64,000 nucleotides of DNA from Mytilus edulis (taxonomy: Eukaryota), in contig NC_092348.1 of the NCBI RefSeq assembly GCF_963676685.1, positions 9,982,001 through 10,046,000 on the forward strand, written 5' to 3'. Positions 1 through 14,090 of this stretch are shown here, piece by piece (positions within the stretch are counted from its first letter, which is position 1; the number at the start of each line of letters is the position of its first letter). Position numbers and translations under genes: made by a program. Under the pieces are notes generated by a model. That model searched no databases, was not told where the DNA came from, and worked only from the letters and a program-made list of their open reading frames with translations.

Positions 1-971
1 GTTTCTCTGTGTGTTGCATCAACGATTGTTTTTGTTGCACTTCAGTGTTTCTGTTGTTTCATTGTTTTCCTATTGTGATTGAAGTGTTTCCCTCAGTTTT
101 AGTTTGTGGCCCGAAATTGTTTTCTCTCAATCGATTTATCACTTTTAAACAGCGGTATACTACTGTTGCCTTTATTTATAAAGCACCGTCATTGGTCTTA
201 GTTATATTTTTAGCAGAATATCTTCAATCGTTCTTTTAGTTAACATTATTAAAGCTTTAGACTTTTACAGAAAGGAAAACAATATAGAAAAAATAACAAA
301 TCCCTTAGTATTTGATTGTCTTTTATGCCTGTACAATATTTTTACAAACGAATGACGTCAGTTCATACAAAATAAAAATAAGAAAACTTACCTCTGGTAG
401 TTAAATACACCTGCTAAAACACACCTTGATTGTTTCATAACAATTCTATCTAATACGGATGTTGAATACCTAACCTTAACCTGAAGGACAACGAAGTTGA
501 CTTCATTAATTTTCTTCCATATTTGCAATGAACATATTAGTTTTACAACTACGTTGTGTACTTAAAATCGTCAAGGATACCTACATCATTTTTCATTTAT
601 ATTTAAACAAAAAACAACAATAAATTCCCCTTTATAATCCCTGGATTGTTTGTTGTTAGAAATTATGTTAATAAAATAAACATCATATGTTACATAAATT
701 GCACAATAAGTGCAGTAGTGAAAAGATGTTTTCTTGAATTACTCAGAATTAAAGCGAAGTGAACGGCAATAGCATGTTAATGGACGAATATCTTCTGAAT
801 ACATCAATCATACTTAGGCATGGAGGGCATGTAGTTTTTTTTTATTGAGACGAACAATCTTTTGTTTCATTTTAATTCTTCAATTACATACAGGAACAAT
901 TTTCTACACCCGAATAGGTTGTCTAAGCTGTATATGCTAAAAAGTCCTAAAAATACGGATGTCAAGTTGGT

Positions 972-1300
972 TCAATATTCAACATTCAACATTGAAAATT
1001 CATTTTTTTTTCTTGTATCCATTTTCAATGTTGAATGTTGAATATTGAAATCGAATGTTGAATGTTGAATGGTGAAATCGATTGTTGAATGTTGAATGTT
1101 GAAAATGGATACAAGAAAAAAAAGGAAAAAAATGAATGTTGAATGTTGAATATTGAAATCGAATGTTGAATATTGAAATCGAATGTTGAATGGTGAAATC
1201 GAATGTTGAATGTTGAAAATGGATACAAGAAAAAAAAAATTGAATGTTGAATGTTGAATATTGAAATCGAATGTTGAATGTTGAAAATGGATACAAGAAA
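972..1300. repeat. Minisatellite built from AATGTTG 7-mers and AATATTGAAATCG / AAAATGGATACAAG modules
   Basis: Visible tandem iteration; accounts for the three overlapping low-complexity ORFs at 972-1391. Confidence 0.85.
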
Positions 1301-1794
1301 AAAAGAATAAAGAACCACCAAACAAAATGTTCATACCCAGATTAAAAAGATATCCTGTATCTAAGATTAACTTACAAAATTCTGCTAACACGTGTTACTT
1401 TCTGTTCTGGTAAATATTACATCAGACAATGACATTAGTCAACCTGCAAATGGTCACGATCCCATCCAATAATACGTGAAGAAAAGGTATACCAAAAGTA
1501 AACGTATGCATTTCCTCATTTCACAATTGTATTCAAACTCCGTTTAATGTGTGTATTGTTACGATTTAGTGATCGTATTATTAAATTAATAGTACTCGTG
1601 TTCTCCATATTCTATAGTAGTAATTTTACGAGTCAGCTGTTTTTGTTTACGTTTTCGCTACGCTATTTTTTACGATGGAATGTCACCTCGTACAGAATAT
1701 TCACGGTTGGTTGGCATGTATTTCAATGATACATGATGCGATAATGTGTTTACCTTATTTGCTTATTTATTTTCTTAATGTAATAACTTGTGTT

Positions 1795-2247
1795 TTAGCC
1801 GTAATCATCTAAATCCCAGCAGTGCCATAGTTTATTTACTAGAGAAGTCATATTTATTTGTGTATTGGCGGTCTGCAACACGAGATTGCCTGTGAACATA
1901 ACAAACGTTTTGATTGGTCGATGCATTGACCGGAAAATTATAAATAGAAGGTTGACGAAACGAACTTCAGATTTAATCTCACCGCCTGCAAGAGCAGTCG
2001 GAATTTATGCTGTCTTGATGTCCTTATAATTAAGTTTGAAGGTTTTGAATGTTTTAAGAAAACTAAACCTTCTAACACATGGCAATTGTTTGTTTTGAAG
2101 AAGAAGAAGACGACCTTCGACCTACGGGAAAGTCCCGTCAGCTGTCGTTCCACTTAGTCAACTTTCTATAAATACGACGAGAGAGGTTTTCTGGAAATCT
2201 ACTTTCACTTTAGCAGAGAGAAACCTTTATGAGGTGATTACGGCAAA
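1795..2247. mobile_element. Possible non-autonomous element with nested inverted repeats
   Basis: Outer IR ttagccgtaatcatct (1795) / aggtgattacggcaaa (2232-2247), 2 mismatches; inner IR tagaaggttgac / gtcaactttcta. Confidence 0.35.
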
Positions 2248-3330
2248 TTGTATATAAATATAAATGTATGTTTTTATGATCAATTGTAAATATTTGATTA
2301 TATAGATGTTATATAAAATGCATCTGAACTTTATACCTGACTTAGTTATTATTTCAACCATATACCAACTCAAAGGATCCATGCAAATTATGTTCGATCG
2401 AGCCTCCTTATTCATTTAAAATTACCACTCGGTTTAAGGGCATCCGATACAGTTTCTCGACATAATGTCATTTTTATAATTTTGAAATATGTTGTAGGCC
2501 TTGGCGAGTTATAAAAAAAAACACAAAAAAAAACATACGTTACCGTGCTTGTTTTCGAGATAATTGAGGCTGAAAATTGGGGATTTGTGCAATTTTGTTA
2601 AAAAGTTTGGCAATGTTATAAAATTTTTGGAGTAGATATTCTTCATCGTAAATTAATAAGAATGGGTTCATTCTGAAGCTGTGGTAAGTGACAATAAGGG
2701 GAAAATAAATAACCTACAGGAATTACTATATATTTATTCAAGCATTGCTTGACTTTGCGGACAAGATGCTCAAAGTGGCACATTTTTTAATCGAAAAATA
2801 CGGAAATAAACTGGTCCTGAAAATGTCATTTTTCTCATTTTTCTACATTAACTGCATTTTGTTACACTTTTTCAAAATCTCAAATAAAAAATATATGTCA
2901 CCGTGCTGGATTCGAAGATAAACGCAGTTGATACTCAAAATTGCGTCCCCCTTTGGTAACCTCGTTATTAGCGCGAAAATGCACGACGTCACTGGCTGAA
3001 AATTTCGACATCTCCCGCCAATTATCCATGCAAGGTCAATCCGGATCGCCTTCGTCGTTTTTAAGGTGTATAATGATTATTTCTCTCTCATTCGAGGGGT
3101 GAAAGGGTCATATTCAGAAATTTGGAATTGCTACGTCTAATTGACAGGGTTCAAGAATAGAAAGTAATTCATATCGTGATGCGGAAACTTATTATTTTCA
3201 TTAGAAATAGGATTTGTTAATTTATTATCGGGAATTACAATTCATGACTTTCTATTGTGCCTCTCTTAAAAATCCTCTATCCGCATGCACCCGAGTACTC
3301 CTTTAACAATTTTGGCATTCAGGAGAATTA

Positions 3331-3506
3331 TTAAGGAGGGGGATAGGACCTTTATCGGGACTCCGGGATCGGGTGTCTTTAAGCTTGGGATTTCGGGATA
3401 GACCATTTCGGGATCCGGGAATTCCTTTTTCGAATATCTGGATGTCGAGATTTAAATTTATTCAAATTCGGGACCACGGGATTTCGTGTTTTTAAGAACC
3501 CTCCTA

Positions 3507-3538
<32 letters not shown>

Positions 3539-3550
3539 CCCCATCATTAA
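3331..3550. mobile_element. Small MITE-like insertion with TCGGGA repeats and a poly-C tract, inside the Kolobok
   Basis: TTAA at both ends, loosely inverted G/C-rich termini, repeated (T)CGGGA motifs. Confidence 0.4.
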
Positions 3551-5331
3551 ATGATAACAAAAAAAATAATTTTTTTTCATTATATTGTAATAAAGTAAGT
3601 TTATAGTCAATGGGAACATTGAAATTCGACATAGGAGAATTACGAACCTCAGTCAAGCATATGGTTCTGAAGAAAATTATTTGAAACTTTTCATACTAGA
3701 ATTGATGTTTTACGCCCAGTTATTCAGAAGCAGAAAAAAATGTAAAAAGAGAAATGGACGGAAGGACGGACAGATGCACATTCAAGTTTTGAAAAGCTAC
3801 AAAAGTGACTATACACTTCATCAGTTGATTAGTGATACATACCTGGTATTAAAAATGATGTTGATGTACGGCTGTTTTATGTCCAGTGGCAAATCAAATG
3901 CATTTGTAGAAGGTCGTACGGTGACATACATGTATGGTTGTTAATGTGTGTGTCATTTGGTCATCTTGTGTAGAGTAATTGTTGTCTCATTGGTAATCAT
4001 ACCATGTTTTATTTTTTTTCAATTAGAGCCAGGCAATCTTATTGCAATATATGAGGGTTAACCATGTTTTGTAGAATTTTACTATATATACAGACATGCG
4101 CTATGGGCCGTTCTAATTAACAAAGTAACTGTACACAAGAAGACATGTCACCATAGCCTGACACTTTAACCAAAATCAAATTTTACCAGTCTTTTAAAAT
4201 CTTATTCCTTGTCACGTGCTTAGCAATGATGTAGCAAATACCAATATTAAAGTATAGTTTAATCCGGCCAGGAGTCTGTAATCAATATGAGCTAAATGTG
4301 TTTGTACATGTATTATTATTCTATTTTTTCTTTCACGAACAAATACAAAACTAATATAATTATTTTGTCACAAACACAAGACAAAACCATCCAAGAGAAA
4401 ATATAAGCACCAACACAAGATTAATCATTTGTTTTGTCATCTAAGGATAGCTGTACACGATGTGCATATTAGTTAACTCGTCTTCAGTCACTGTATTTTC
4501 AAAGGTACACCTATTGATTTTGTATGAATATTTACTGTGTATATATATGTATAAAGCAGCACAATGAATTATATTTGATAACTAATTAATTTTACACTCC
4601 TGCATTTTGATCTACTTACGAACCTTGTGCTATTAAGCATTTCTGTACACACTTGTACTTTTCCGAAACATCTTCCCGTGATTAGTATAAAAAGCAAACT
4701 GCAACTTTGAGATGAAGAACATCAATAAAAGTGCTGTTCTTTTGCCCTAAGTGTGTTTTTACTGCGCATGTGCTGATTTTTTTTATGGATCTTTGATACC
4801 CCATATCCTTTGGTTTTTTATATTTATCATTCTAGAATTATTTTGGTTCTTTTTTTTTAGGAATAAAAGTAAAACAAACACCAGAAATAAATGTGTTGAT
4901 ACATTTATCAGTACAAAATATTGTATGCATCGTAATCGAACAAAGATAATTAAAACAAGATTTTTAAGTTATCAGTCCTTTATACACATTTATAAAAGCA
5001 CAATATTTTTACATTTTCCCTAAGAAACAAATCAAAATAGCATTATTTTTTCTTAAAATGTATATTAACTAGCGTGCCTTTTAAAAAAAAGGCCATAAAA
5101 CCATTCATTGGAGAATTACGAACTGCAAATGCATTTTGTTTACATGATTAATTAAGATTATATGATATAATTTAGATTATATGATAAAAATGTTCAACAA
5201 ATTTCATTGACTATGTGATTACAAAGCTAATTTTGTAAAAATATATGATAATTGTACTATAAATACAGAACATTTCTAAAAATATGTTATTTGAATGAAT
5301 AACGAAGAACTCCAAACGATGTTTTTTTTAA

Positions 5332-7324
5332 TTACTTATTTTCGTAATATCCGGTTATTTTTTTTATGACGGCCGCTGTTTTCGTAACACGAGGTGAACC
5401 GTCCTGTCTCCTTTGAGACAATAAATCAAGTAAACCCTGAAAGCCTTTTCTATTAAATGCAAGATCCAGATGACATTTCTTCAGACCGGATTGGGCACAC
5501 TTTACAGCCATCTGAGCAGACATATATTTTCCCTTAACAAGATCTCCAAAACTCTCAGCATCAACCTTTACCATTTTATCATATTTCATGTTTTCAGCTA
5601 TCGCTTCAACTGTAAAAGAAAATTCAAGTACATCTTGCTTTTCTACTTTGGAAACAGCCATTAACTTGTGTAAGGATTCCACATCATCAACGGCATTATG
5701 CGCATTGTACTGCTCATTACAAAAATGTTCAAATAATTTTTGCTGACTGTAGCTGTTTAGCCCTGGGAATTTTTGCCGGAAAAGCGGAAGCGTGTCGGCG
5801 AATCCAGATACGCATTTCCTAAAAGCTGCATAGCAGGTTAAATTGGACATGTTATTTAGCAAACGCCTAGCATCAAATAATTTGCAATTATGTGCAACAA
5901 GCATAACCTGACCGTATTGTTCTAACCAAAGGACAAAACTCTGGAACGCTGATTCCGAAGTAACTGCATGAACAGGTTTTCCATTGTAAAAAAGGATATT
6001 TCCATTTGCAGTTAAACCAGTAACGGCACTGGAACTCGGCGCTATTGATTTATTCGGCTGAATATAAGTATCAAACTTATCACCAGAGACAGTGTTTAAT
6101 GCAGCTATTTGCAGAATTTCAGAATCTAATTTCAGCGAAGATGTTTCCAGGTCAAAAATTATGCAACTACCTTCAAATGATGAAAAGGGCAATGATGCAG
6201 GTTTCTGTTTGATTCCCGGAATCTCTTTATCCTCAGTAACCAAGGAAAGAGACAGTCCCGATTTATATGTTACACCTTCTTTTTTTTCTGTCTGTTTTAT
6301 TTTATTTCTAAATTTCTTCTTTTCTAATCGCCGTTTTTTTACAACTGGTTGCTGGGAGTACTTCTGTTTCCGTTTTCTTTCTTTTAACAACTTTCCGGAA
6401 TGATTATCAGTGATTTCATCCGTTAAAAGGTTAGCTTGTGTATTTATGCAGAAAATGTAAGAATACCCTATGTTTTTTTGCAAGACTGCAGCGCTCACCC
6501 GTGTTTTAAGATTTTCGCTTTTACTAAAACAGAACCGTTTAGGAGCTTTAGATGCATAAATATTGTTGGTAGACTCCACATCTTTTGTTGATCCAGCCGG
6601 TGCTAGACGTTCAGCATTGTTAGCTACCGTTTCAAATATGACTTGGACGTCTTTTCGTAAAGCATCATCTGTAAGTGGTTTTCCATGAGGGAGATATTTA
6701 TGAAAATTATTTTCATTGCTTTTATTACACCAATCGCCACATTTGTCATGACTACCGAATGAATGAGGAACAATAGCTGTTAGTGTTTCTTTAAGTTTAG
6801 TTTCATTGTTTTTATTCTGTTGAATAGCATATGAAAAACACATTTTGTAATATTCTATGATATCTGTACTTAGTGCTTTGTGCTTAGATTTCAAATTATA
6901 AAAAGCATTTCCGAGTGATTTTGTTGAGTGGTTAATATCGCTCCATTTTTTTACATCGTGGTCCAAAGCTTCTTTTACCCTAGACAAAGTGGCTGCATCA
7001 TCATCCATGATAAGCACATCGACAGGAACCCCAGACACTTCTTCTATATTTTCCATCAGGGATGCCCCTGTTGACGATTCCATGGCTTTTGCGCTTTTTG
7101 ACCAATTCTTTTGACAGTTGTGTGGTTTTGCGTTTCTTTTGGCTTTCTCAGCACTATGACATATGGCGCAATGTGTAACACGCAGGTCGTAATCTAATAT
7201 TTTTCCAGTAAGCTGGCCAATTGCTGTCCCAACGCCAGACGAACTACTATACGAGCGACCTGATCCTCGCTTCTGCCAACACATGTCGTATTTTACTACC
7301 AATCCTTTCCCTGGTGTTGTAATT
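5332..7324 (-). CDS. Kolobok transposase coding exon 3: DDE catalytic domain + DEDDh 3'-5' exonuclease + PML-like C-terminal domain
   Basis: Acceptor TTTTTAG| at 7325. Transposase motifs YDMCWQKRG (D), CAIC/HNC, SAKAME, MDDDAA (D), DINH, H..C..WC, TKDVESTNN (E). Exonuclease motifs FDLETS (ExoI), VAHN..FDA (ExoII), HNAVDDV (ExoIII). Spliced product is ~796 aa from the Met at 10468. Confidence 0.9.
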
Positions 7325-7865
7325 CTAAAAAAATATTAATTTTACATATTATTTTTTATTATTATATTGGTTTTATAATTCTAATTATAAATTCTACGTA
7401 GTATTTAAAAAGACTAATATTGCCAGCAACACAGAATATAGCTATAGCAACAGCATCGTTAAATTCCAATTATGAGCTACGTGGAGTTTTTGGGATTGAT
7501 TGTTGATTGGTTGATGTCCAGTGGCAATCATTTCATGCATATTCAGGACGAGGTACTTTTACGATCTAGACTGTGAGCAGAAAAAGCGTTTTCAATTTTT
7601 ATGCGCCAAATATGTTTACAGATTTTGCAAAAAGTTGTCTCATTCCTAATTGACAATATGAATTAAGTTCACAGTTTTTTTCTCAATCCGTATTAACAAT
7701 TTGTATTTAGTTTACAGTACTTTCAATTATTATTTTTTCTTTTGTGTGTTTTTTTTTTGTTTTGTTTTTTTATTCAAATTTGTATATATTGCGTTTTCAT
7801 TAATATTGTATTGGTATCACCATCTCTCCTTAGGGAGGCTAATAAAGATATATATATATCAAAAT

Positions 7866-8101
7866 AGCGGGACGGCTACAGTGCAGGCGATTTGCCGTGT
7901 CACGATATCTCAGTAGCATGGGTTCGAATCCCGGCGAGGGAAGAAAAAAAAATTTGCGAAAGCAAATTTACAGATCTTACATTGTTGGGTTGATGTTTAG
8001 ACGAGTTGTATATACATAATGTACACAGCCATGTATCACCCTCATTGCTGGTGATCCGATGGATAAATCTGTTGTAGAGTTGTCACTGACTCAGACGTAC
8101 T
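7866..8101 (+). mobile_element. 5'-truncated tRNA-derived SINE in intron 2 of the transposase gene
   Basis: B-box GGTTCGAATCCC at 7921-7932; 17-bp direct repeat TATATATATATCAAAAT at 7849-7865 and 8102-8118. Confidence 0.75.
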
Positions 8102-9045
8102 TATATATATATCAAAATGTATATACTCTGTTTTTGCAAAAAGGATTGTCTATACACATCTCATTATAACTCTGGAAATTTAATAAATAATTACACAGAT
8201 GAAGCACTACCTTTTTATACGACCAAAAAGTTTTCGCGTTCGTATAATGTTATAACGTTGTCAGTCTCGTTCTCGTCCGACAAAAGTTACCAGACAAAAA
8301 TTGTACCACCTCTTAAAAATTGTAAAACACATTTCTATACCAATAAAAAGAAAGTTGTGAATAATTTTGGAGGTTGTGGTCCTAATTAATTAGATAAAGA
8401 GATAAAACAGAACTTTTATTACAGTTGGTATAAACCATTATTTCTTGACCAATACCAATGTGCTTAAATTCAAAGTCTTGATTTCTTACGGTTATTTAAT
8501 GGGCTGAATCTGAAGTGATTTTTCATTTCCCGCGAAGGCTAAAATAAATTGATATTTTCCCCATCTTTAAAAGTTTTACCGCATTTCTCGGGGGAAATAT
8601 TTTCCAAGATATTTTACTATAAAATTTGAAGAAAATCAATCAAGGTTCTCGACCAATGTATGTTGTCGATAACTACGACGTTAAAAGAAAGTCAATTGCC
8701 AAACAGGTGCTTGATTTTTCACGTGTTTTTTTTTAGTTGTCATTGTAACGCAATTTCCAGTAAATTACGTAACCCCTCATTTGGGCACAAAATGTCATGA
8801 CCGTCTTTTAATTGGTCCACTTTTAATTCGAAAATTAAATTTTTGGGGTTTCTTCAAAAACCGAATTCTTGGCGTTATTTGATATGCTGATTTTAACTTT
8901 GAATTTAAATTTCATGCCTGGTTTTCAAATTGGATCCAAGATAAACTAAAGTTCGATTTTAATGATAAAAAAAGATGAATGCAATGGTTCTTTTGATATG
9001 CTGAATCTAAACTCTTAAAAATAATTCCGGTATCTGCATAATTAC

Positions 9046-9223
9046 CTTGTTTCTGAACATTCCTTTGTAATTGCTTCATGACATGAATCTCGTGCTACAT
9101 CTACCATTGGTTGGAACAGTTCGCGTTCTCTCTTCTTCATCGTTCTCTCAGAACTACTAGGAACACCCATTATTGTCATAAGTCTGGAAAGCTGACGAAC
9201 ACCTATGCCAACGTCTATCATTG
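9046..9223 (-). CDS. Kolobok transposase coding exon 2 (not in the ORF track)
   Basis: Acceptor TTTTAG| at 9224; 178 nt, (A)MIDVGIGVRQLSRLMTIMGVPSSSERTMKKRERELFQPMVDVARDSCHEAITKECSET(R); donor AG|GTAATT. Phases join exons 1 and 3 in frame. Confidence 0.85.
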
Positions 9224-10248
9224 CTAAAATTTAAATAGCAATGTGTAGAGGTATTTAAATTAGATCTCAATAAAGTTAGCTGACATTGGAATACATTTTT
9301 ACAGAAACATGTTCATCACTTGAGTTCACAATACTAGACATAGTATTCTTGGTTTTGGAAACGGAGAAGCACGGACTGACGATATTATGAAAATAATACA
9401 TATGATTCTGTTATTTTCCTTCTTCTGGAAGCATAACATCGTCTAATTAATTTCCGGAAAGAATACATTGGCATTAAAATGAAAGATCTGTTGGTATATA
9501 CAAAAACCTTTATTTGATAGAAGTTGTTTATGTGTTTGTTATAGAAAATCTATTTTCATGTATAGTCGCCGATATTACAATGTATGGGCAGTATGATTTT
9601 ATACGGTTTCGTTAGGTGTTTCACGGATTCATGAACTATAGTTTTGTAGCTATGGAGTGAGAAATATCGCAGGTACTTAAGCTTGTTGTGGATTTTTTAT
9701 TTATTTCTTAGATTAAATGCAAATTAGAGCTAGACATACTGCATGGCACTGTTGAAGTAAAAGTAACACACGCAACTCAGATTGTTGAAGACATTAGGAT
9801 GATATCTCGGTGTTTTTTTTAAAAGTTATTTAGTTTTTTCCCTGTAAATTGTTTTAGTTGGTCGGATGCTGTCTCTTTCACAAACAGCAAAAACTCATTG
9901 AAAGAGGGGTGCAGCATTCCAAGGAAGCAGTTAATCACTTGGAATTTTTGTTATCGACACTATCACGATATCGTTGACCGTTATGGAATATATGGAGAAA
10001 GCTCAAAGTAAAGCCGTTATAATATGAGCTTTGTATATAGATTGACTACATATCATTGTGACCGCTTCCTCTCATTTTAAAGAATAAAATGTACTATTAT
10101 AAAGACGTAGAAGTTGATATGTCTGAAAAACATTAATTCAGGAATCGTTTAAACTGTGTTGTTTTAAAAAAATAAAAATTAAGGAATGTAATCGCAAGAG
10201 ACTGAGCAACAATGATATATCAATTCAAGAGATGTATTATCTAAATAC

Positions 10249-10468
10249 CTAATGCTGCTTTTGTGTTGACATCATACACCTGTGGACCACGTTTTCCATG
10301 TACGTGCGTTTCACTGGTCTCGATCTGATTAACTTGTCCGCATTCACATCGTATAAACAAATGGCTTGCATACCCCATATTTTTTTCAGATGTAATGTTT
10401 ATCAGAGCAAGTGCCTCCTTGCATTTTCGACAAAAGAGCTGTTTGGCTACATAAAATAGATCTATCAT
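10249..10468 (-). CDS. Kolobok transposase coding exon 1 (Cys-rich Zn-binding region)
   Basis: MIDLFYVAKQLFCRKC...GYASHLFIRCECG...YDVNTKAAL; phase-1 donor G|GTATTT at 10249/10248. The frame stays open upstream to a TAA at ~10530. Confidence 0.85.
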
Positions 10469-10722
10469 TCTTCTTCCTTTTTTCCATGACTCCTCATCAA
10501 CTGTGACCGTTTCTGTGTTCGCTAAGTCTTATAACATGCTCTGACGTTTTTTGCTTTGACTGTTTCACTTTTTCTCGTCTCTCTTTCTCTCTATGGCTAA
10601 GAAAGTGCCCGGAGTTTACCATTTTTAATGGCAGTTCCTGCAACCGGTTCCCGTCACAGTGACGTCATGGCATTCAAATGGGAAGGAGAAGTTTATTAAG
10701 GAAAATTACACGCATGACGTCC

Positions 10723-10810
10723 CGCCGAAAGTAACGTTTTTGGGAATTTGAACGTTGAACGTCGCGCCGAAAGTAACGTTTTTGGGAATTTGAACGTTGA
10801 ACGTCGCGCC
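10723..10810. repeat. 42-bp tandem duplication in the Kolobok subterminal region
   Basis: CGCCGAAAGTAACGTTTTTGGGAATTTGAACGTTGAACGTCG at 10723 and 10765. Confidence 0.9.
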
Positions 10811-10905
10811 TAGAGTTACCTCCCTTGAAACTGTATCGGATGCCCTTAAGGGGCGAAATCGTTACAGTATGATAGTTATCAAAGGTACCAGGTTTATAAT
10901 TTGCT

Positions 10906-10949
10906 ACGCCAGACGCCCGTTTTGTCTACATAAGACTCACCAGTGACGC
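10906..10949 (-). ncRNA. Type I hammerhead ribozyme, degenerate copy 1
   Basis: GCGUCA-CUGGUGA-GUCU(UAUGU)AGAC-AAAA-CGGGCGUC-UGGCGU; stems I and II intact, core differs from CUGAUGA/GAAA. Confidence 0.7.
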
Positions 10950-11266
10950 TCAGATCAAAATAGTTAGAGAGCAAAAACAAGTACAAGGTTGAAGTGCATT
11001 GATGGACCCAAATTCCAAAGCAGTTGTGCCAAATACGGCTAAGGTAATCTATGCCTGGGATAAGAAAATCCTTAGTATTTAGAATAATTCATATTTTTGC
11101 AAACAGTAAATTTATATAAAAAAAGGACCATATAATTGATATTCACGTCAACACCGAAGTGCTGACTACTGGGCTGGTGATACCCTCGGGGACGTAAAGT
11201 CGGCTAGAAGTGGCATCGACCCAGTGGAGTAAATAGTTATCAAAGGTACCAGGCTTATTATTTGGT

Positions 11267-11310
11267 ACCCCAGACGCGCGTTTCGTCTATATAAGACTTA
11301 TGAGTGACGC
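11267..11310 (-). ncRNA. Type I hammerhead ribozyme, degenerate copy 2
   Basis: GCGUCA-CUCAUAA-GUCU(UAUAU)AGAC-GAAA-CGCGCGUC-UGGGGU; GAAA, palindromic stem III and the GUC site intact, CUGAUGA box mutated. Confidence 0.7.
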
Positions 11311-12704
11311 TCAGAACAAAATAGTTAGAAAGCCAAAACAAGTACAAGATTGAAGAGCATTGATGACCCAAAATTCCCAAAAAGTATGACAGACAGGAAT
11401 ACGAAACTGTCATTTCATGATATTGGCACGGTTCAAGTCCACATTTCAGCTCGCAAACGTAGCATTTATATCATTTGTAAAGTTAGATTTACTCAGAAAC
11501 TCGTTACAACAACAAAATGAAGCCGAATAAAAGAATTGTCCATGTTCAACTTTGAACTCGAGTGACTGGCAAACTTATGTGGCTTAATAACAATTACATA
11601 ACTTCTTAAGAAATAAAAAACATCAGAACAATATCATCAAAAATACTGAAAAATTAGCTGACAAAATGTCTATTTCTTAAAATTGTCCCAAGTTCAGTGA
11701 CCGGTTTTATGTCAAAATAGGTAAAAAAAAAAAAAAAAAAAAAAAATGTATTCAACTTTTCAAAATAAAACAATATAAAAAATGAACTCAATAAATAAAA
11801 CGGGTAATGGACAAAGGAGGGAAACATAAATTGAAAAGCAATATGTAAAGTTTTACTCAATTTAACTTAATGTTCACATAAATACAGAGCTAAAAAAAGT
11901 ACTTTGTATTTGCATATTTTTTGTCAATACCAACTTTTTGTGTAACTCGAAAACTTTAAATGCAAAACTGTTGTACATCAAGTTTTGAAGTGAAGTGATT
12001 TTTGTGTGGAGAACAGATTAATAATATTAAATGTAAGACAAACGGAGATTGGTGCAAAACTCAGATTTTAGCAAAAGAGACATATAAAATTAAGAACAAT
12101 TGAATTCATTTAAATATAATTACGTCTTCTACCGTTTCACCAACACTTTATGAAAACGATTTAAAAAAATAAAACAAATGGAGAATAATCTGAATTAAAT
12201 CAAAAGATTTGTGCGAGGGTTATAAAGCTATAAAACAAAAGAAAAGAATATAAAAATATAAAACATCATAATGTTTTTTTTTATCTATTTTACCACTGTC
12301 ATATTAGTGGGAGGTTTTGCTAGCTAAAAAAGGTTTTATCACAATTTTCGACATTAAGAAATATCTGTACTTATTAAGGAATATAACAGTTGTTTTTCAT
12401 TTGTTTGGTGTGTTTGAGCTTTTGTTTTTGCCAATTGAGAAAGGACATGCTGTTTAAATGTATTATATAAATGTGGCTCCATGTCTAATGCCATTTCAGT
12501 GGTCGAGTTGTTTGTAGAAGATCTTTTCATTTTAATTAAGGTATCTTTATTGCCGCCTCATGTTTGACAAATTCACTCACACACCACTGATAACAACTAA
12601 TAGTATATTTGATTGAATCATTCGTCAGCTCTTTGGGTTGCCTTTTTCCTACTGCAAGCACTTATTAACTGAAACTATTATATGTTAAACGTGAAATCAA
12701 GTAT

Positions 12705-14090
12705 AAAGTAAAATCACAAAAGTTCTGAACTTAGAGGAAAATCAATTCGGAAAGTCCATAATCACATGGCAAAATCAAATAACAAAACGCAGCCAAAATG
12801 AATGGACAAGAACTGTCATATTCCTGACTTGGTACAGGCATTTTCAAATGTAGAAAATGGTGGATTAAACCTGGTTTTATAGCGCTAACCCTCTCACTTT
12901 GATGACAGTCTCATTAAATAACAGTACATAGTGATTGATATTTTTTTATTTGTAAATGTACCCATAATTGCATTATTATTTGCATTCTCAATAACTTATA
13001 TTATTGACGCAGTGTATTCAATAATAAACTAGTAATAAGTAAGTATACGAACAATTTGGCGCGGAAGATCAATCTCAAAGATGTAAAAAAATCATCACGG
13101 CATATTTTATATTTTTCAAGCCAAAACAAAATAAGAATAAGCAAATGTTTTACTTGTATGTATTTTTTTGTATTCTGTTCATGCATTAAGTTACGACCAT
13201 AAACGTTGCTTTCTTATTGAAAAAGTAAAATCACAAAAATACTGAACTCCGAGGAAAATTCAAAATGGAAAGTCCCTAAACAAATGGCAAAATCAAATGA
13301 TAGAACACATCAAACGAATGGACAACAACTGTCAACCTGACTTGGTACAGATATTTTCAAATGTAGAAAATGGTGTATTGAACCTGGTTTTATAGCGCTA
13401 AACCTTTCACTTGTACGACAGTCGCATAAAAAAATCTATTATATTGACAATGGAAAATGAAGCGTGAACAAAATGTCACAAATATGGGTACAACAACAAC
13501 ATGAACCCCATCATAAACTGAGGGTGATAACAGATGCTCCGGAAGGGTACGCCGATCCTACTCTACGTGTGGCACTTGTCGTGTTGCTCATGTTAATACA
13601 AGGCCGATAAATAGTTTAATTCGGTAGGTCACATTCTTGAAAAGGGAACGGGATTGTAGTTACGACATAAAGAACATATCCGATATCATATGTATAATGG
13701 ATATTTAACCAACGCATGATGGCGTCCGTAAAATTTAAGAAGTTATGATTTCAACTAGGATCTCTTGGTTTAAAAATGAAAAGGTCACAATAAGGAAGCT
13801 GAAATCATCACTTTTGTCGTAAAAATATTTGTTTTCAACCGACCCTCAAAATCAATTTCTAGATATAAGTCATGACCAAATGGCAAAATCAAAAGCTCAA
13901 ACAAATCAAACGAATGGATAACAACTGTCAAATCCCTGACTTGTTAAAGGCATTTTCTTACGTAGAAAATGGTGGATTGAACCTGGTTTTATAGCGCTAA
14001 ACCTCTCACTTGTATGACAGTCGCATCAAATTTAATTATATTTACAACGATGCGTGAACAAAACAGACATAATAGGTAAAATAGTCAAGA
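12705..14090 (-). mobile_element. Cluster of three SINE-like copies of one family (~12705-12920, ~13220-13480, ~13878-14090)
   Basis: Shared CAAATGGCAAAATCAAA...CCTGACTTGGTACAG...AGAAAATGGTGGATT.AACCTGGTTTTATAGCGCTAA block. Further fragments at ~12305-12450 (+) and ~43050-43105 (+). Confidence 0.7.
13500..13875 (-). pseudogene. Decayed 3' fragment of a Penelope-like RT element
   Basis: Minus strand reads EGRLKT../YDKSDDFSFLIVTFSF across a frameshift, homologous to YDKRDDFSFPIVNYPF in the 14816 ORF. Confidence 0.6.

What the first reader, a model, noticed from the sequence alone, without database searches (positions are those of the whole stretch)
2438..10845. Structurally complete Kolobok transposon whose spliced transposase is fused to a DEDDh exonuclease with a PML-like tail
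Seen: perfect 19-bp TIRs, a TTAA TSD, and three exons (10468-10249, 9223-9046, 7324-5332) whose phases join into ~796 aa. The product has a Zn-binding Cys region, a DDE domain (D.CWQKRG / DDD / ESTN), a basic NLS-like linker, a complete DEDDh nuclease (DLETS, HN..FD, HNAVDD), and a helical tail (MAVKCAQSGL...PRVTK). Established: Kolobok elements have RR..YY ends with TTAA TSDs, and some carry accessory nucleases; PML and PML-like proteins contain a C-terminal DEDDh-fold region. Inference: a cut-and-paste transposase with its own 3'-5' exonuclease, which could trim ends, clear excised DNA or suppress competing retroelement cDNA. It would also be a mobile relative of domesticated PML-like exonucleases. 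The ORF track misses the middle exon, so automated annotation would call only an exonuclease.
Basis: partly seen in the sequence, partly recalled or inferred. Interest (0 to 1): 0.82.

Follow-up and report, generated by a model that had tools for sequence, protein, structure and literature searches.

The report
Intact KolobokD transposon with Plex9-like exonuclease
This is a complete, recently inserted and transcribed cut-and-paste DNA transposon of a mussel, from the KolobokD lineage described in 2022. Its transposase is fused to an apparently active 3'-5' exonuclease whose closest solved relatives are the fish Plex9 exonucleases, the family that includes PML exon 9.

Summary
Window 2438-10845 is bounded by perfect 19-bp inverted repeats (5'-GG...CC-3') and a duplicated TTAA. 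Six uninserted copies of the host LTR show the empty site with a single TTAA.

The three minus-strand exons have GT/AG borders and matching phases. Contig joints in transcriptome-like runs support both introns, and gene models in two other Mytilus species carry the same exon chain.

The product has three parts:
- a Kolobok-type DDE transposase (D6, D100-102, E243, DxxH, two zinc fingers, RNase H-like fold);
- a DEDDh exonuclease with all five catalytic residues invariant from sponge to insects;
- a helical tail that matches Pfam PML_C.

At least 270 candidate non-autonomous copies carry the same ends, and every copy inspected has TTAA next to its terminal repeats.

The kind is already described: KolobokD (Kojima and Bao 2022, molluscs, arthropods, cnidarians). 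What no paper in the held library mentions is how close the exonuclease is to fish Plex9. It scores 158-200 bits against Plex9-type structures, 61 against Exuperantia and 21-31 against TREX, and Foldseek gives TM 0.91. The direction of descent and the exonuclease's role remain untested.

The scan has already reported two sister elements elsewhere in this genome, with the same reading.

The parts
2434..2437 (.). Left copy of the TTAA target-site duplication
   Evidence: Uninserted copies of the host LTR have a single TTAA here.
2438..2456 (+). Left terminal inverted repeat (the 3' end of the element relative to its gene), 5'-GGGCATCCGATACAGTTTC
   Evidence: It is 100% complementary to 10827-10845. 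The identical 19-mer ends every non-autonomous copy examined.
2438..3009 (+). Subterminal region shared with the non-autonomous family (about 3-kb elements, a 5.6-kb element and a 414-bp MITE)
   Evidence: About 82-87% identity over roughly 575 bp in L023-L029, and 92% over 352 bp in MITE L031. The first look gave at least 271 candidates in the genome; the 40 that were scored are 92-95% identical over the first 267 bp.
3010..5331 (-). 3' non-coding part of the element. It contains a C28 run (3507-3534) and a nested repeat of about 160 bp (about 3338-3496).
   Evidence: No ORF in it was noticed with a family assignment. Only one other related copy exists, at C3:12791600-12795705 (88-89% identity). 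The 160-bp piece accounts for nearly all the scored matches of a query with 4,578 first-look candidates. RNA contigs cover at least 5250-5331.
5332..7324 (-). Exon 3: the rest of the transposase, the basic linker, the exonuclease, the tail and the stop codon
   Evidence: One open frame of 663 codons plus the stop. The AG acceptor lies at 7326-7325. The joint 7324->9046 appears in contigs of X1 and X4, and a variant of it in X2.
6433..7324 (-). DDE catalytic core of the transposase. It carries D6, D100-102 and E243, the DxxH signature D122-H125, a CCHC finger (C45, C48, H61, C63) and a second finger (H180, H185, C188, C192).
   Evidence: PF20700 at 182 bits. The residues are conserved in alignments A1 and A3. 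The AF2 model has D6 on strand 1, D100-102 after strand 4 and E243 on a helix. VIA-align gives Z 9-10 to integrase cores, ISCth4, Hermes, TnsB and MuA.
6280..6384 (-). Basic, NLS-like linker (KERKRK...KKRRLEKKK)
   Evidence: Sequence. The KERKR / KKRRL blocks recur in homologues. A nuclear-import role is inferred only.
5659..6168 (-). DEDDh 3'-5' exonuclease domain (D384, E386, D477, H535, D540)
   Evidence: RNase_T E 1.4e-12. All five residues are invariant in 17 sequences from mussels, insects and a sponge. PDB phmmer gives 1e-30 to 2e-25 against Plex9-type chains. Foldseek's top hit is Plex9.1, 9mrc, with TM 0.91.
5335..5658 (-). Helical tail, SAM-like, matching Pfam PML_C (PML_C hit at aa 583-655 = 5338-5556)
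   Evidence: PML_C E 2e-13, 50.8 bits against a cut-off of 27.1. The model shows five helices after the last strand, with pLDDT above 90. Foldseek aligns both domains to Exuperantia EXO+SAM, 5l80.
7325..9045 (-). Intron 2 (GT..AG), carrying nested SINE-like repeats at about 7494-8112
   Evidence: Contigs of three runs skip it. Away from the repeats, depth is zero in X1 and X4.
9046..9223 (-). Exon 2 (transposase N-terminal region)
   Evidence: PF20700 profile positions 80-133. Splice sites. Present in the gene models P0003 and P0001.
9224..10248 (-). Intron 1 (GT..AG)
   Evidence: The joint 9223->10249 appears in one contig of X4 with a 26-nt anchor. The intron is retained in contigs of X1 and X2. 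The junction is confirmed by P0003 and P0001.
10249..10468 (-). Exon 1: the start codon and a CxxC...CxC zinc-ribbon-like region
   Evidence: PF20700 profile positions 8-79. Translation.
10469..10826 (-). 5' leader / presumed promoter, with a 42-bp subterminal tandem repeat (10717-10810, 2.2 copies, 98% matches)
   Evidence: Region 10694-10849 is shared at 83-87% identity with the non-autonomous copies. RNA contigs reach 10752 and break at the repeat. The promoter role is inferred.
10827..10845 (-). Right terminal inverted repeat
10846..10849 (.). Right copy of the TTAA target-site duplication

Best explanation
Window 2438-10845 is an autonomous, apparently intact KolobokD DNA transposon of a Mytilus mussel. 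It inserted recently into a TTAA 17 bp from the end of a young LTR.

Its three-exon gene encodes one polypeptide with these parts:
- an N-terminal zinc-ribbon/DNA-binding region;
- a Kolobok-type DDE (RNase H-like) catalytic core that cuts the element out and pastes it into TTAA sites;
- a basic NLS-like linker;
- a catalytically intact DEDDh 3'-5' exonuclease of the Plex9 type;
- a SAM-like/PML_C helical tail that probably binds nucleic acid.

The same 19-bp ends bound hundreds of non-coding derivatives, which this kind of transposase would mobilise in trans.

Shown here: the structure, the insertion event, splicing and transcription, the domain identities, and the conservation of both active sites.

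Inferred, about one chance in three: the exonuclease acts in cis on DNA 3' ends made during excision or integration, for example by trimming flaps or overhangs at the donor or target. The alternative is that it acts on other cellular DNA.
For: Ends and insertion:
- TIR and TSD.
- Every end examined, in nine loci plus nine fetched elements, has the same TIR next to TTAA.
- The empty site, left flank + one TTAA + right flank, is present in 6 of 6 sampled copies of the host LTR. Those copies are 98-100% identical to the window flank.

Gene structure and transcription:
- Splice sites and phases.
- Joints 7324->9046 in three runs and 9223->10249 in one run.
- The same exon chain in the models P0003 and P0001.

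Transposase:
- Pfam PF20700 across all three exons.
- The Kolobok signatures listed in PMC9587614 are present: DxxH, a zinc finger between D2 and E, and a CCHC finger after D1.
- RNase H-like fold, Z 9-10.

Exonuclease and tail:
- DEDDh residues invariant from sponge to insects to mussels.
- Plex9-type PDB hits at 1e-30 to 2e-25, or 158-200 bits with a profile.
- AF2 pLDDT 93.9, and TM 0.91 to Plex9.1.

Fusion as a unit:
- Divergence of the transposase and of the exonuclease runs in parallel across 16 homologues.
- Two paralogues in this genome also have TTAA plus RR-starting TIRs.
- The fusion clusters in arthropods, molluscs and cnidarians.
Against: - Only one intact copy exists in this assembly. 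Its subterminal regions differ by 5-18% from the abundant non-autonomous copies, so it may not be their actual driver.
- No excision or new insertion has been observed.
- The raw RNA run X21 showed no reads on the exons.
- The runs with joints are only guessed to be RNA.
- One transcribed copy (X1) carries a premature stop at 6137.
- Of the 16 variants listed, 8 are synonymous and 8 are not. That shows only mild constraint, in a small sample.
- Nothing here shows what the exonuclease does.
Confidence: 0.88

Rival explanations
1. It is a domesticated host gene derived from a KolobokD element. On this reading it is a single-copy, expressed, conserved mussel gene that no longer moves, and its exonuclease serves the host, for example as a Plex9/TREX1-like restrictor of retroelement DNA.
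For: There is one intact copy per assembly. Homologues 94-95% identical in protein exist in M. californianus and M. coruscus. Spliced contigs more than 99% identical occur under three species labels.
Against: - The TIRs are perfect and the TSD is intact.
- The insertion sits inside an LTR family whose copies are 98-100% identical, so it is recent.
- Hundreds of non-autonomous elements have identical TIRs.
- At least one allele or copy carries a premature stop.
Confidence: 0.06
2. It is the same KolobokD element, but the exonuclease does not process the element's own transposition intermediates. Instead it degrades other DNA or RNA. Candidates are excised or unintegrated transposon DNA (to avoid cytosolic DNA sensing) or cDNA of competing retroelements, as Plex9 and TREX1 do for LINEs.
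For: - Its closest characterised relatives, Plex9.1 and gar PML, are 3'-5' exonucleases that suppress L1/L2 retrotransposition (PMC10123124).
- The SAM-like tail is shared with the RNA-binding proteins Exu and PML PXL (PMC13659232).
- A 3'-5' exonuclease acting on transposon 3'-OH ends would destroy the strands needed for strand transfer (established transposase chemistry; my inference).
Against: The covalent fusion to the transposase is conserved across four phyla. That suggests a role in the transpososome itself. No experiment bears on either view.
Confidence: 0.3
3. It is a Mutator-like (MULE) element, as the Pfam family name PF20700 'Mutator-like transposase' suggests, or else a piggyBac element, given the TTAA target.
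For: PF20700 scores 182 bits. The TSD is TTAA.
Against: - MULEs make TSDs of roughly 8-11 bp (my knowledge). Here every copy examined has the 4-bp TTAA.
- piggyBac ends are not 5'-RR...YY-3' (PMC9587614), and no piggyBac transposase family appears in the Pfam scan.
- The DxxH motif, both zinc fingers and the RR/YY termini fit the published Kolobok definition.
Confidence: 0.02

Closest known systems
KolobokD lineage of the Kolobok superfamily (Kojima and Bao, Mob DNA 2022, PMC9587614)
   Same: TTAA TSD, 5'-RR...YY-3' termini and a DDE transposase with C/DxxH. It has a zinc finger between D2 and E, a CCHC finger after D1, and a DEDDh (DnaQ-type) exonuclease downstream of the transposase. Hosts include molluscs.
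   Different: This specific Mytilus family was not compared with the published reference sequences, because no Repbase or Dfam copy is on hand. The paper notes similarity to Exuperantia, TREX and ERI1. It does not mention Plex9/PML or the PML_C/SAM-like tail. A sponge homologue (P0014, Sycon) would extend the reported host range.
Fish Plex9 exonucleases and the PML-I C-terminal exonuclease-like module (PML-CDE / PXL; PMC10123124, PMC13659232; PDB 9MRC/9MRD)
   Same: The exonuclease domain is about 37-40% identical (hand count). Profile scores are 158-200 bits. Foldseek gives TM 0.91 to Plex9.1. The DEDDh site is intact, as in Plex9. Exonuclease followed by a helical tail is the arrangement of PML PXL, and the tail hits Pfam PML_C.
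   Different: Plex9 and PML are vertebrate host genes at the PML locus, without a transposase, TIRs or TSD. The solved Plex9 chains lack the tail. Human PXL has lost the catalytic residues. Which of the two gave rise to the other is not resolved.
Drosophila Exuperantia (EXO-like + SAM-like domains, PDB 5L80)
   Same: The same two-domain arrangement. It is Foldseek rank 3-5, scores 61 bits with the profile and hits Pfam Exu_RNase_H_like at 2.4e-6.
   Different: Exu is a catalytically dead RNA-localisation factor. The element's domain keeps all DEDDh residues and is far closer to Plex9.
TREX1/TREX2
   Same: DEDDh fold and 3'-5' DNA exonuclease chemistry. They are Foldseek hits at 1e-9.
   Different: Sequence similarity is only marginal, 21-31 bits with the profile. 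They have no SAM-like tail.
piggyBac transposons
   Same: TTAA target-site duplication and a cut-and-paste life style.
   Different: An unrelated transposase family, and different termini.

Membership tests
Kolobok superfamily | 4-bp TTAA target-site duplication | tested here: met
   TTAA lies on both sides of the window element and of the 8 fetched elements with both ends. It also lies next to all single ends seen. The empty sites have a single TTAA.
Kolobok superfamily | Termini 5'-RR ... YY-3' | tested here: met
   5'-GGGCATCC...GGATGCCC-3'. The paralogues start with AG. The definition is taken from PMC9587614.
Kolobok superfamily | DDD/E transposase with an RNase H-like core and a C/DxxH signature between the second D and E | tested here: met
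   D6, D100-102 and E243, with D122-I-N-H125. Fold Z 9-10 to DDE enzymes.
Kolobok superfamily | Zinc finger between the second D and E, downstream of C/DxxH | tested here: met
   H180, H185, C188 and C192 are invariant in A3.
Kolobok superfamily | Clusters with Kolobok reference transposases (Repbase) on a tree | not testable with these tools
   No Repbase or Dfam sequences are available by reference. The term 'KolobokD' does not occur in the supplement files of PMC9587614 that are held as text.
KolobokD lineage | DEDDh (DnaQ) exonuclease encoded downstream of the transposase | tested here: met
   It lies in the same ORF, at aa 379-548, with all five catalytic residues.
KolobokD lineage | Second, CCHC zinc finger downstream of the first catalytic D | tested here: met
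   C45, C48, H61 and C63. C48, H61 and C63 are nearly invariant.
Mutator/MULE (name of Pfam PF20700) | Long TSD (about 8-11 bp), usually with long TIRs | tested here: not met
   The TSD is the 4-bp TTAA and the TIR is 19 bp.
piggyBac | piggyBac-type DDD transposase | tested here: not met
   The Pfam scan of all three exons returns PF20700 and no piggyBac family.
Plex9 / PML-CDE exonuclease family | DEDDh exonuclease domain with significant sequence similarity to Plex9.1 | tested here: met
   E 2e-25 to 9MRC and 1e-30 to 9L8B. Profile scores 158-200 bits. Foldseek TM 0.91.
Plex9 / PML-CDE exonuclease family | PML C-terminal (SAM-like) helical domain after the exonuclease, as in PML-I PXL | tested here: met
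   PF25244 at 50.8 bits against a cut-off of 27.1. The model has a five-helix tail. The PXL structure itself is not in the libraries, so no direct superposition was done.
Plex9 / PML-CDE exonuclease family | Vertebrate host gene syntenic with the PML locus | tested here: not met
   It lies inside a TIR-bounded mobile element of a mollusc. It is therefore a relative, not an orthologue.
Plex9 / PML-CDE exonuclease family | Measured 3'-5' exonuclease activity | not testable with these tools
   Only the conservation of the catalytic residues is shown.

The most novel reading that the evidence does not exclude
The exonuclease-plus-SAM-like module of vertebrate Plex9 genes and of PML exon 9 was domesticated from a KolobokD-type transposon. 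Elements like this mussel copy would then be living representatives of the source of part of PML.

The evidence does not exclude this. The mussel exonuclease is about as similar to fish Plex9-type proteins (about 37-40%) as it is to KolobokD exonucleases of insects and a sponge (38-40%). The PML_C tail is found in KolobokD across four phyla. PML/Plex9 is reported only from jawed vertebrates. The opposite direction (capture of a host exonuclease by an ancestral Kolobok) and simple sister-group descent remain open.
Probability: 0.3. Interest if true: 0.7.

Novelty: new member of a known kind. Interest (0 to 1): 0.42.

Why it matters
As a transposon it is a clean, probably active reference copy of KolobokD. 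It comes with natural non-autonomous partners (a 414-bp MITE and 3-kb elements), which makes it usable for the first excision and integration assays of any Kolobok element. It could also show what a transposase-fused 3'-5' exonuclease does.

Its wider interest is the close kinship with Plex9 and PML exon 9. If a proper tree places the vertebrate genes inside KolobokD diversity, part of the tumour suppressor PML, and the fish anti-LINE exonucleases, would be transposon-derived. The papers on PML, Plex9 and KolobokD in the held library do not raise this point.

Tried and rejected
- Spliced protein. Each exon was searched by reference, and the junction codons were read from the sequence.
I therefore could not test whether the M. 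californianus and M. coruscus homologues sit at the same locus or have TIRs.
- Tree with Plex9/PML. Three word searches never reached fish Plex9 or PML, so no tree including them could be built. I did not use the large representative search. The protein was not left open, and its best 150 hits would probably be transposon copies.
- Transposase fold. Foldseek on the transposase model gave only weak hits, E 0.01-0.06. The fold was settled with VIA-align.
- RNA families. Rfam at gathering score found nothing in 1-13000. ARAGORN found no tRNA in the element.
- Expression. Raw RNA run X21 gave no exon reads.
- Non-autonomous elements. A 3-kb element (L023) has no meaningful ORF.
- Rejected readings. 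MULE and piggyBac were rejected on TSD, termini and family grounds. A chimeric gene model was rejected because transposase and exonuclease share one uninterrupted exon, here and in four phyla.


Full report
**Observation**

The inverted-repeat search returned arms 2434-2456 and 10827-10849, 23 nt and 100% complementary. That is TTAA followed by the 19-bp terminal repeat GGGCATCCGATACAGTTTC.

I read the minus strand directly and checked it by script. The three proposed exons, 10468-10249, 9223-9046 and 7324-5332, are bordered by GT donors and AG acceptors. They are 220, 178 and 1993 nt long, 2391 nt or 797 codons in all. Each translates without an internal stop in the frame set by the previous exon. 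The junction codons are g|ca (Ala) and ag|a (Arg).

Each exon was analysed by reference.

**Domains**

Pfam places the three exons on consecutive parts of one transposase profile, PF20700: profile positions 8-79, 80-133 and 153-357. In exon 3 it also finds RNase_T (aa 381-546, E 1.4e-12), Exu_RNase_H_like (2.4e-6) and PML_C (aa 583-655, E 2e-13, 50.8 bits against a cut-off of 27.1).

**It is an insertion**

The 200 bp to the left of the element belong to a repeat with at least 57 candidate copies. Many of them lie in direct pairs about 6.8 kb apart and are 98-100% identical to the window. This is the pattern of LTRs of a young LTR retrotransposon.

Six of six sampled copies read ...CCACTCGGT-TTAA-GGGGCGAAATCGTTACA without interruption. 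That is the window's left flank, one TTAA and the window's right flank. Two of them are followed by a primer-binding-site-like TGG... sequence and the others by unrelated DNA. The element therefore entered a TTAA 17 bp from the LTR end and duplicated it, after the LTR element itself had spread.

**Family in this genome**

The genome is 1.37 Gb. Its best protein matches are Mytilus species.

- The left 267 bp of the element have at least 271 candidate matches; the 40 scored are 92-95% identical. The right 92 bp have at least 210, scored at 86-97%.
- All nine fetched copies have the 19-mer next to TTAA, perfect or with one mismatch. Both ends lie within the fetched stretch in eight of them: six of about 3 kb, one of 5.6 kb and a 414-bp MITE. 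The ninth is about 13 kb and was fetched only in part.
- They share only about 575 bp of the left end and about 150 bp of the right end with the window element. A 3-kb copy has no real ORF.
- The coding element itself is unique. The next best relative is a decayed copy at C3:12789-12796 kb, 88-89% identical in DNA, with five stops in the exonuclease.
- The genome also holds many more distant paralogues with the same transposase-exonuclease-tail order, at 29-56% identity. Two intact ones that I examined are bounded by TTAA and by 16-17-nt inverted repeats beginning with AG.

**Transcription and splicing**

I laid contigs of three transcriptome-like runs from three studies under three species labels.

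- They cover the exons at more than 99% identity. Two of the three (X1, X4) have no depth in intron 2 outside its nested repeats.
- A joint 7324->9046, with CT..AC ends that read GT..AG on the gene strand, is present in X1 and X4. A one-base variant of it is present in X2.
- The joint 9223->10249 is present in X4, with a short 26-nt anchor.
- X1 and X2 also hold contigs that retain intron 1.
- These runs are only guessed to be RNA. A raw RNA run (X21, about 6% read) had no exon reads.
- Among the 16 listed differences in coding sequence, 8 are synonymous and 8 are not. One is a stop at 6137 in X1.

Independent support for both junctions comes from gene models in other species. P0003 (M. californianus, RefSeq) and P0001 (M. 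coruscus) align without gaps across ...TKAALA|MIDVGIGV... and ...KECSETR|I.TPGKGL.VKYDMCW.

**Transposase**

An alignment with 16 homologues from mussels, sawflies, a beetle, a wasp and a sponge (positions) shows:

- the catalytic candidates D6, D100-102 and E243;
- a DxxH motif, D122-H125;
- a CCHC finger, C45/C48/H61/C63, after the first D;
- an invariant H180/H185/C188/C192 finger between the second D and E.

These are the signatures that Kojima and Bao give for Kolobok. The CCHC finger occurs only in a few lineages, including KolobokD (PMC9587614).

The AlphaFold model of aa 1-370 has mean pLDDT 70, and 80-92 over most of the core. It puts D6 on strand 1, D100-102 after strand 4 and E243 on a helix behind an all-helical insertion. 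Foldseek hits were weak. VIA-align gave Z 9-10 to retroviral integrase cores, to the IS256-family transposase ISCth4 (196 residues aligned), to Hermes (214 aligned), and to TnsB and MuA.

**Exonuclease and tail**

D384, E386, D477, H535 and D540 are invariant in all 17 sequences. The model of aa 370-656 is confident (pLDDT 93.9). It shows an exonuclease fold followed by five helices.

Sequence search of the PDB:

| Match | Single sequence | Profile of six KolobokD sequences, bits |
|---|---|---|
| 9L8B | E 1e-30 | 200 |
| 9L85 / 9L87 | E 1.5e-27 | 163 |
| 9MRD | E 6e-26 | 163 |
| 9MRC | E 2e-25 | 158 |
| Exuperantia | E 0.029 | 61 |
| PolC exonuclease | E 1e-4 | 46 |
| TREX2 | no hit at E <= 1 | 31 |
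| TREX1 | no hit at E <= 1 | 21 |

9MRC is zebrafish Plex9.1 according to PMC13659232 and to the entry title.

Foldseek ranks Plex9.1 first (TM 0.91 on the target, 31% identity). The two-domain EXO+SAM structure of Exuperantia comes next, then TREX1/2. The crystal structure of the human PML PXL domain is not in the libraries.

Over the exonuclease domain, the window protein is 38-40% identical to the KolobokD proteins of insects and the sponge. It is about 37-40% identical to the fish chains (my hand count on the alignments). The fish proteins are thus no further from it than transposon copies of other phyla. Divergence of the transposase and of the exonuclease runs in parallel over the 16 homologues, as expected for a fusion inherited as a unit.

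**Comparison with the literature**

Kojima and Bao (2022) defined KolobokD as Kolobok families that encode a DEDDh exonuclease. They found them in molluscs, arthropods and cnidarians. They noted similarity to Exuperantia, TREX and ERI1, and proposed that the nuclease degrades DNA intermediates from the 3' end during transposition. The ESM Atlas clusters carrying PF20700 + RNase_T + PML_C have the same three-phylum distribution. A sponge protein, P0014, adds Porifera.

The element here is therefore a new member of a known kind.

In the held library, KolobokD is named in that one paper only. Plex9 as an exonuclease appears only in the two PML studies. Neither of those mentions transposases, Kolobok or invertebrates. 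So the Plex9/PML kinship appears not to have been discussed. Absence from this library is not proof.

Two earlier follow-ups of this scan, on other loci of the same genome, reached the same reading. I reached mine from my own searches before seeing them.

**Mechanism**

- Shown: a mobile-element structure, a recent TTAA insertion, a spliced transcript, and two intact and conserved active sites in one polypeptide.
- Follows from established knowledge of DDE transposases: cut-and-paste by the RNase H-like core at the TIRs, and mobilisation of non-autonomous copies that share the TIRs.
- Inferred: nuclear import through the basic linker, nucleic-acid binding by the SAM-like tail (by analogy with Exu and PXL), and the role of the exonuclease.

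I favour action of the exonuclease on 3' ends at the donor or target during transposition, because the fusion is kept across four phyla. I give this only about one chance in three. A Plex9/TREX1-like role against other DNA is nearly as likely.

**Limits**

No tree including Plex9/PML could be built, because the word searches did not reach them. No Repbase comparison was possible.

Noticed in passing
window 2238-2437 and 10850-10866: The element sits 17 bp from the end of an LTR of a very young LTR retrotransposon family. There are at least 57 candidate copies, many in direct pairs about 6.8 kb apart and 98-100% identical. Two sampled copies are followed by a PBS-like TGGTGTCAG...
   Followed up: partly
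window about 7494-8112 (intron 2): Nested SINE-like repeats with very high summed depth in the RNA-like runs (up to 88,102) and strand-biased raw RNA reads. ARAGORN finds no tRNA gene there.
   Followed up: no
window about 3338-3496: A repeat of about 160 bp inside the element's 3' non-coding region. Nearly all scored matches of a query with 4,578 first-look candidates fall on it, at mostly 87-92% identity. It is probably a nested MITE or SINE.
   Followed up: no
window 10872 onward: The right flank beyond the LTR end is a highly repeated unit (4,699 candidates), tandem with a period of about 355 bp elsewhere (for example C7:45905394-45908404). Rfam at gathering score found no family in 1-13000.
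   Followed up: partly
window 10717-10810 and 10660-10667: A 42-bp subterminal tandem repeat (2.2 copies, 98% matches) lies just inside the right TIR, with a TGACGTCA (CRE-like) palindrome upstream of the start codon. These are candidates for transposase binding sites and a promoter element.
   Followed up: no
window 6137: The contig of run X1 (another species label) carries G>T here, turning Ser389 (TCG) of the FDLETSS motif region into a stop. At least one transcribed copy elsewhere is therefore defective.
   Followed up: partly
G000:C13:38275215-38284550 and G000:C2:99590712-99600018 (loci L039/L042, L040/L043): Two further intact-looking KolobokD paralogues (39-40% protein identity, open frames of 693 and 564 aa). 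Each is about 9.3 kb and bounded by TTAA and 16-17-nt inverted repeats that begin with AG. A third (C7:13903360-13905318, 50% identity) showed no TIR pair under my thresholds.
   Followed up: partly
protein P0014 (Sycon ciliatum): A calcareous sponge protein has the same transposase + exonuclease + PML_C order. This would extend KolobokD beyond the three phyla reported in 2022.
   Followed up: no
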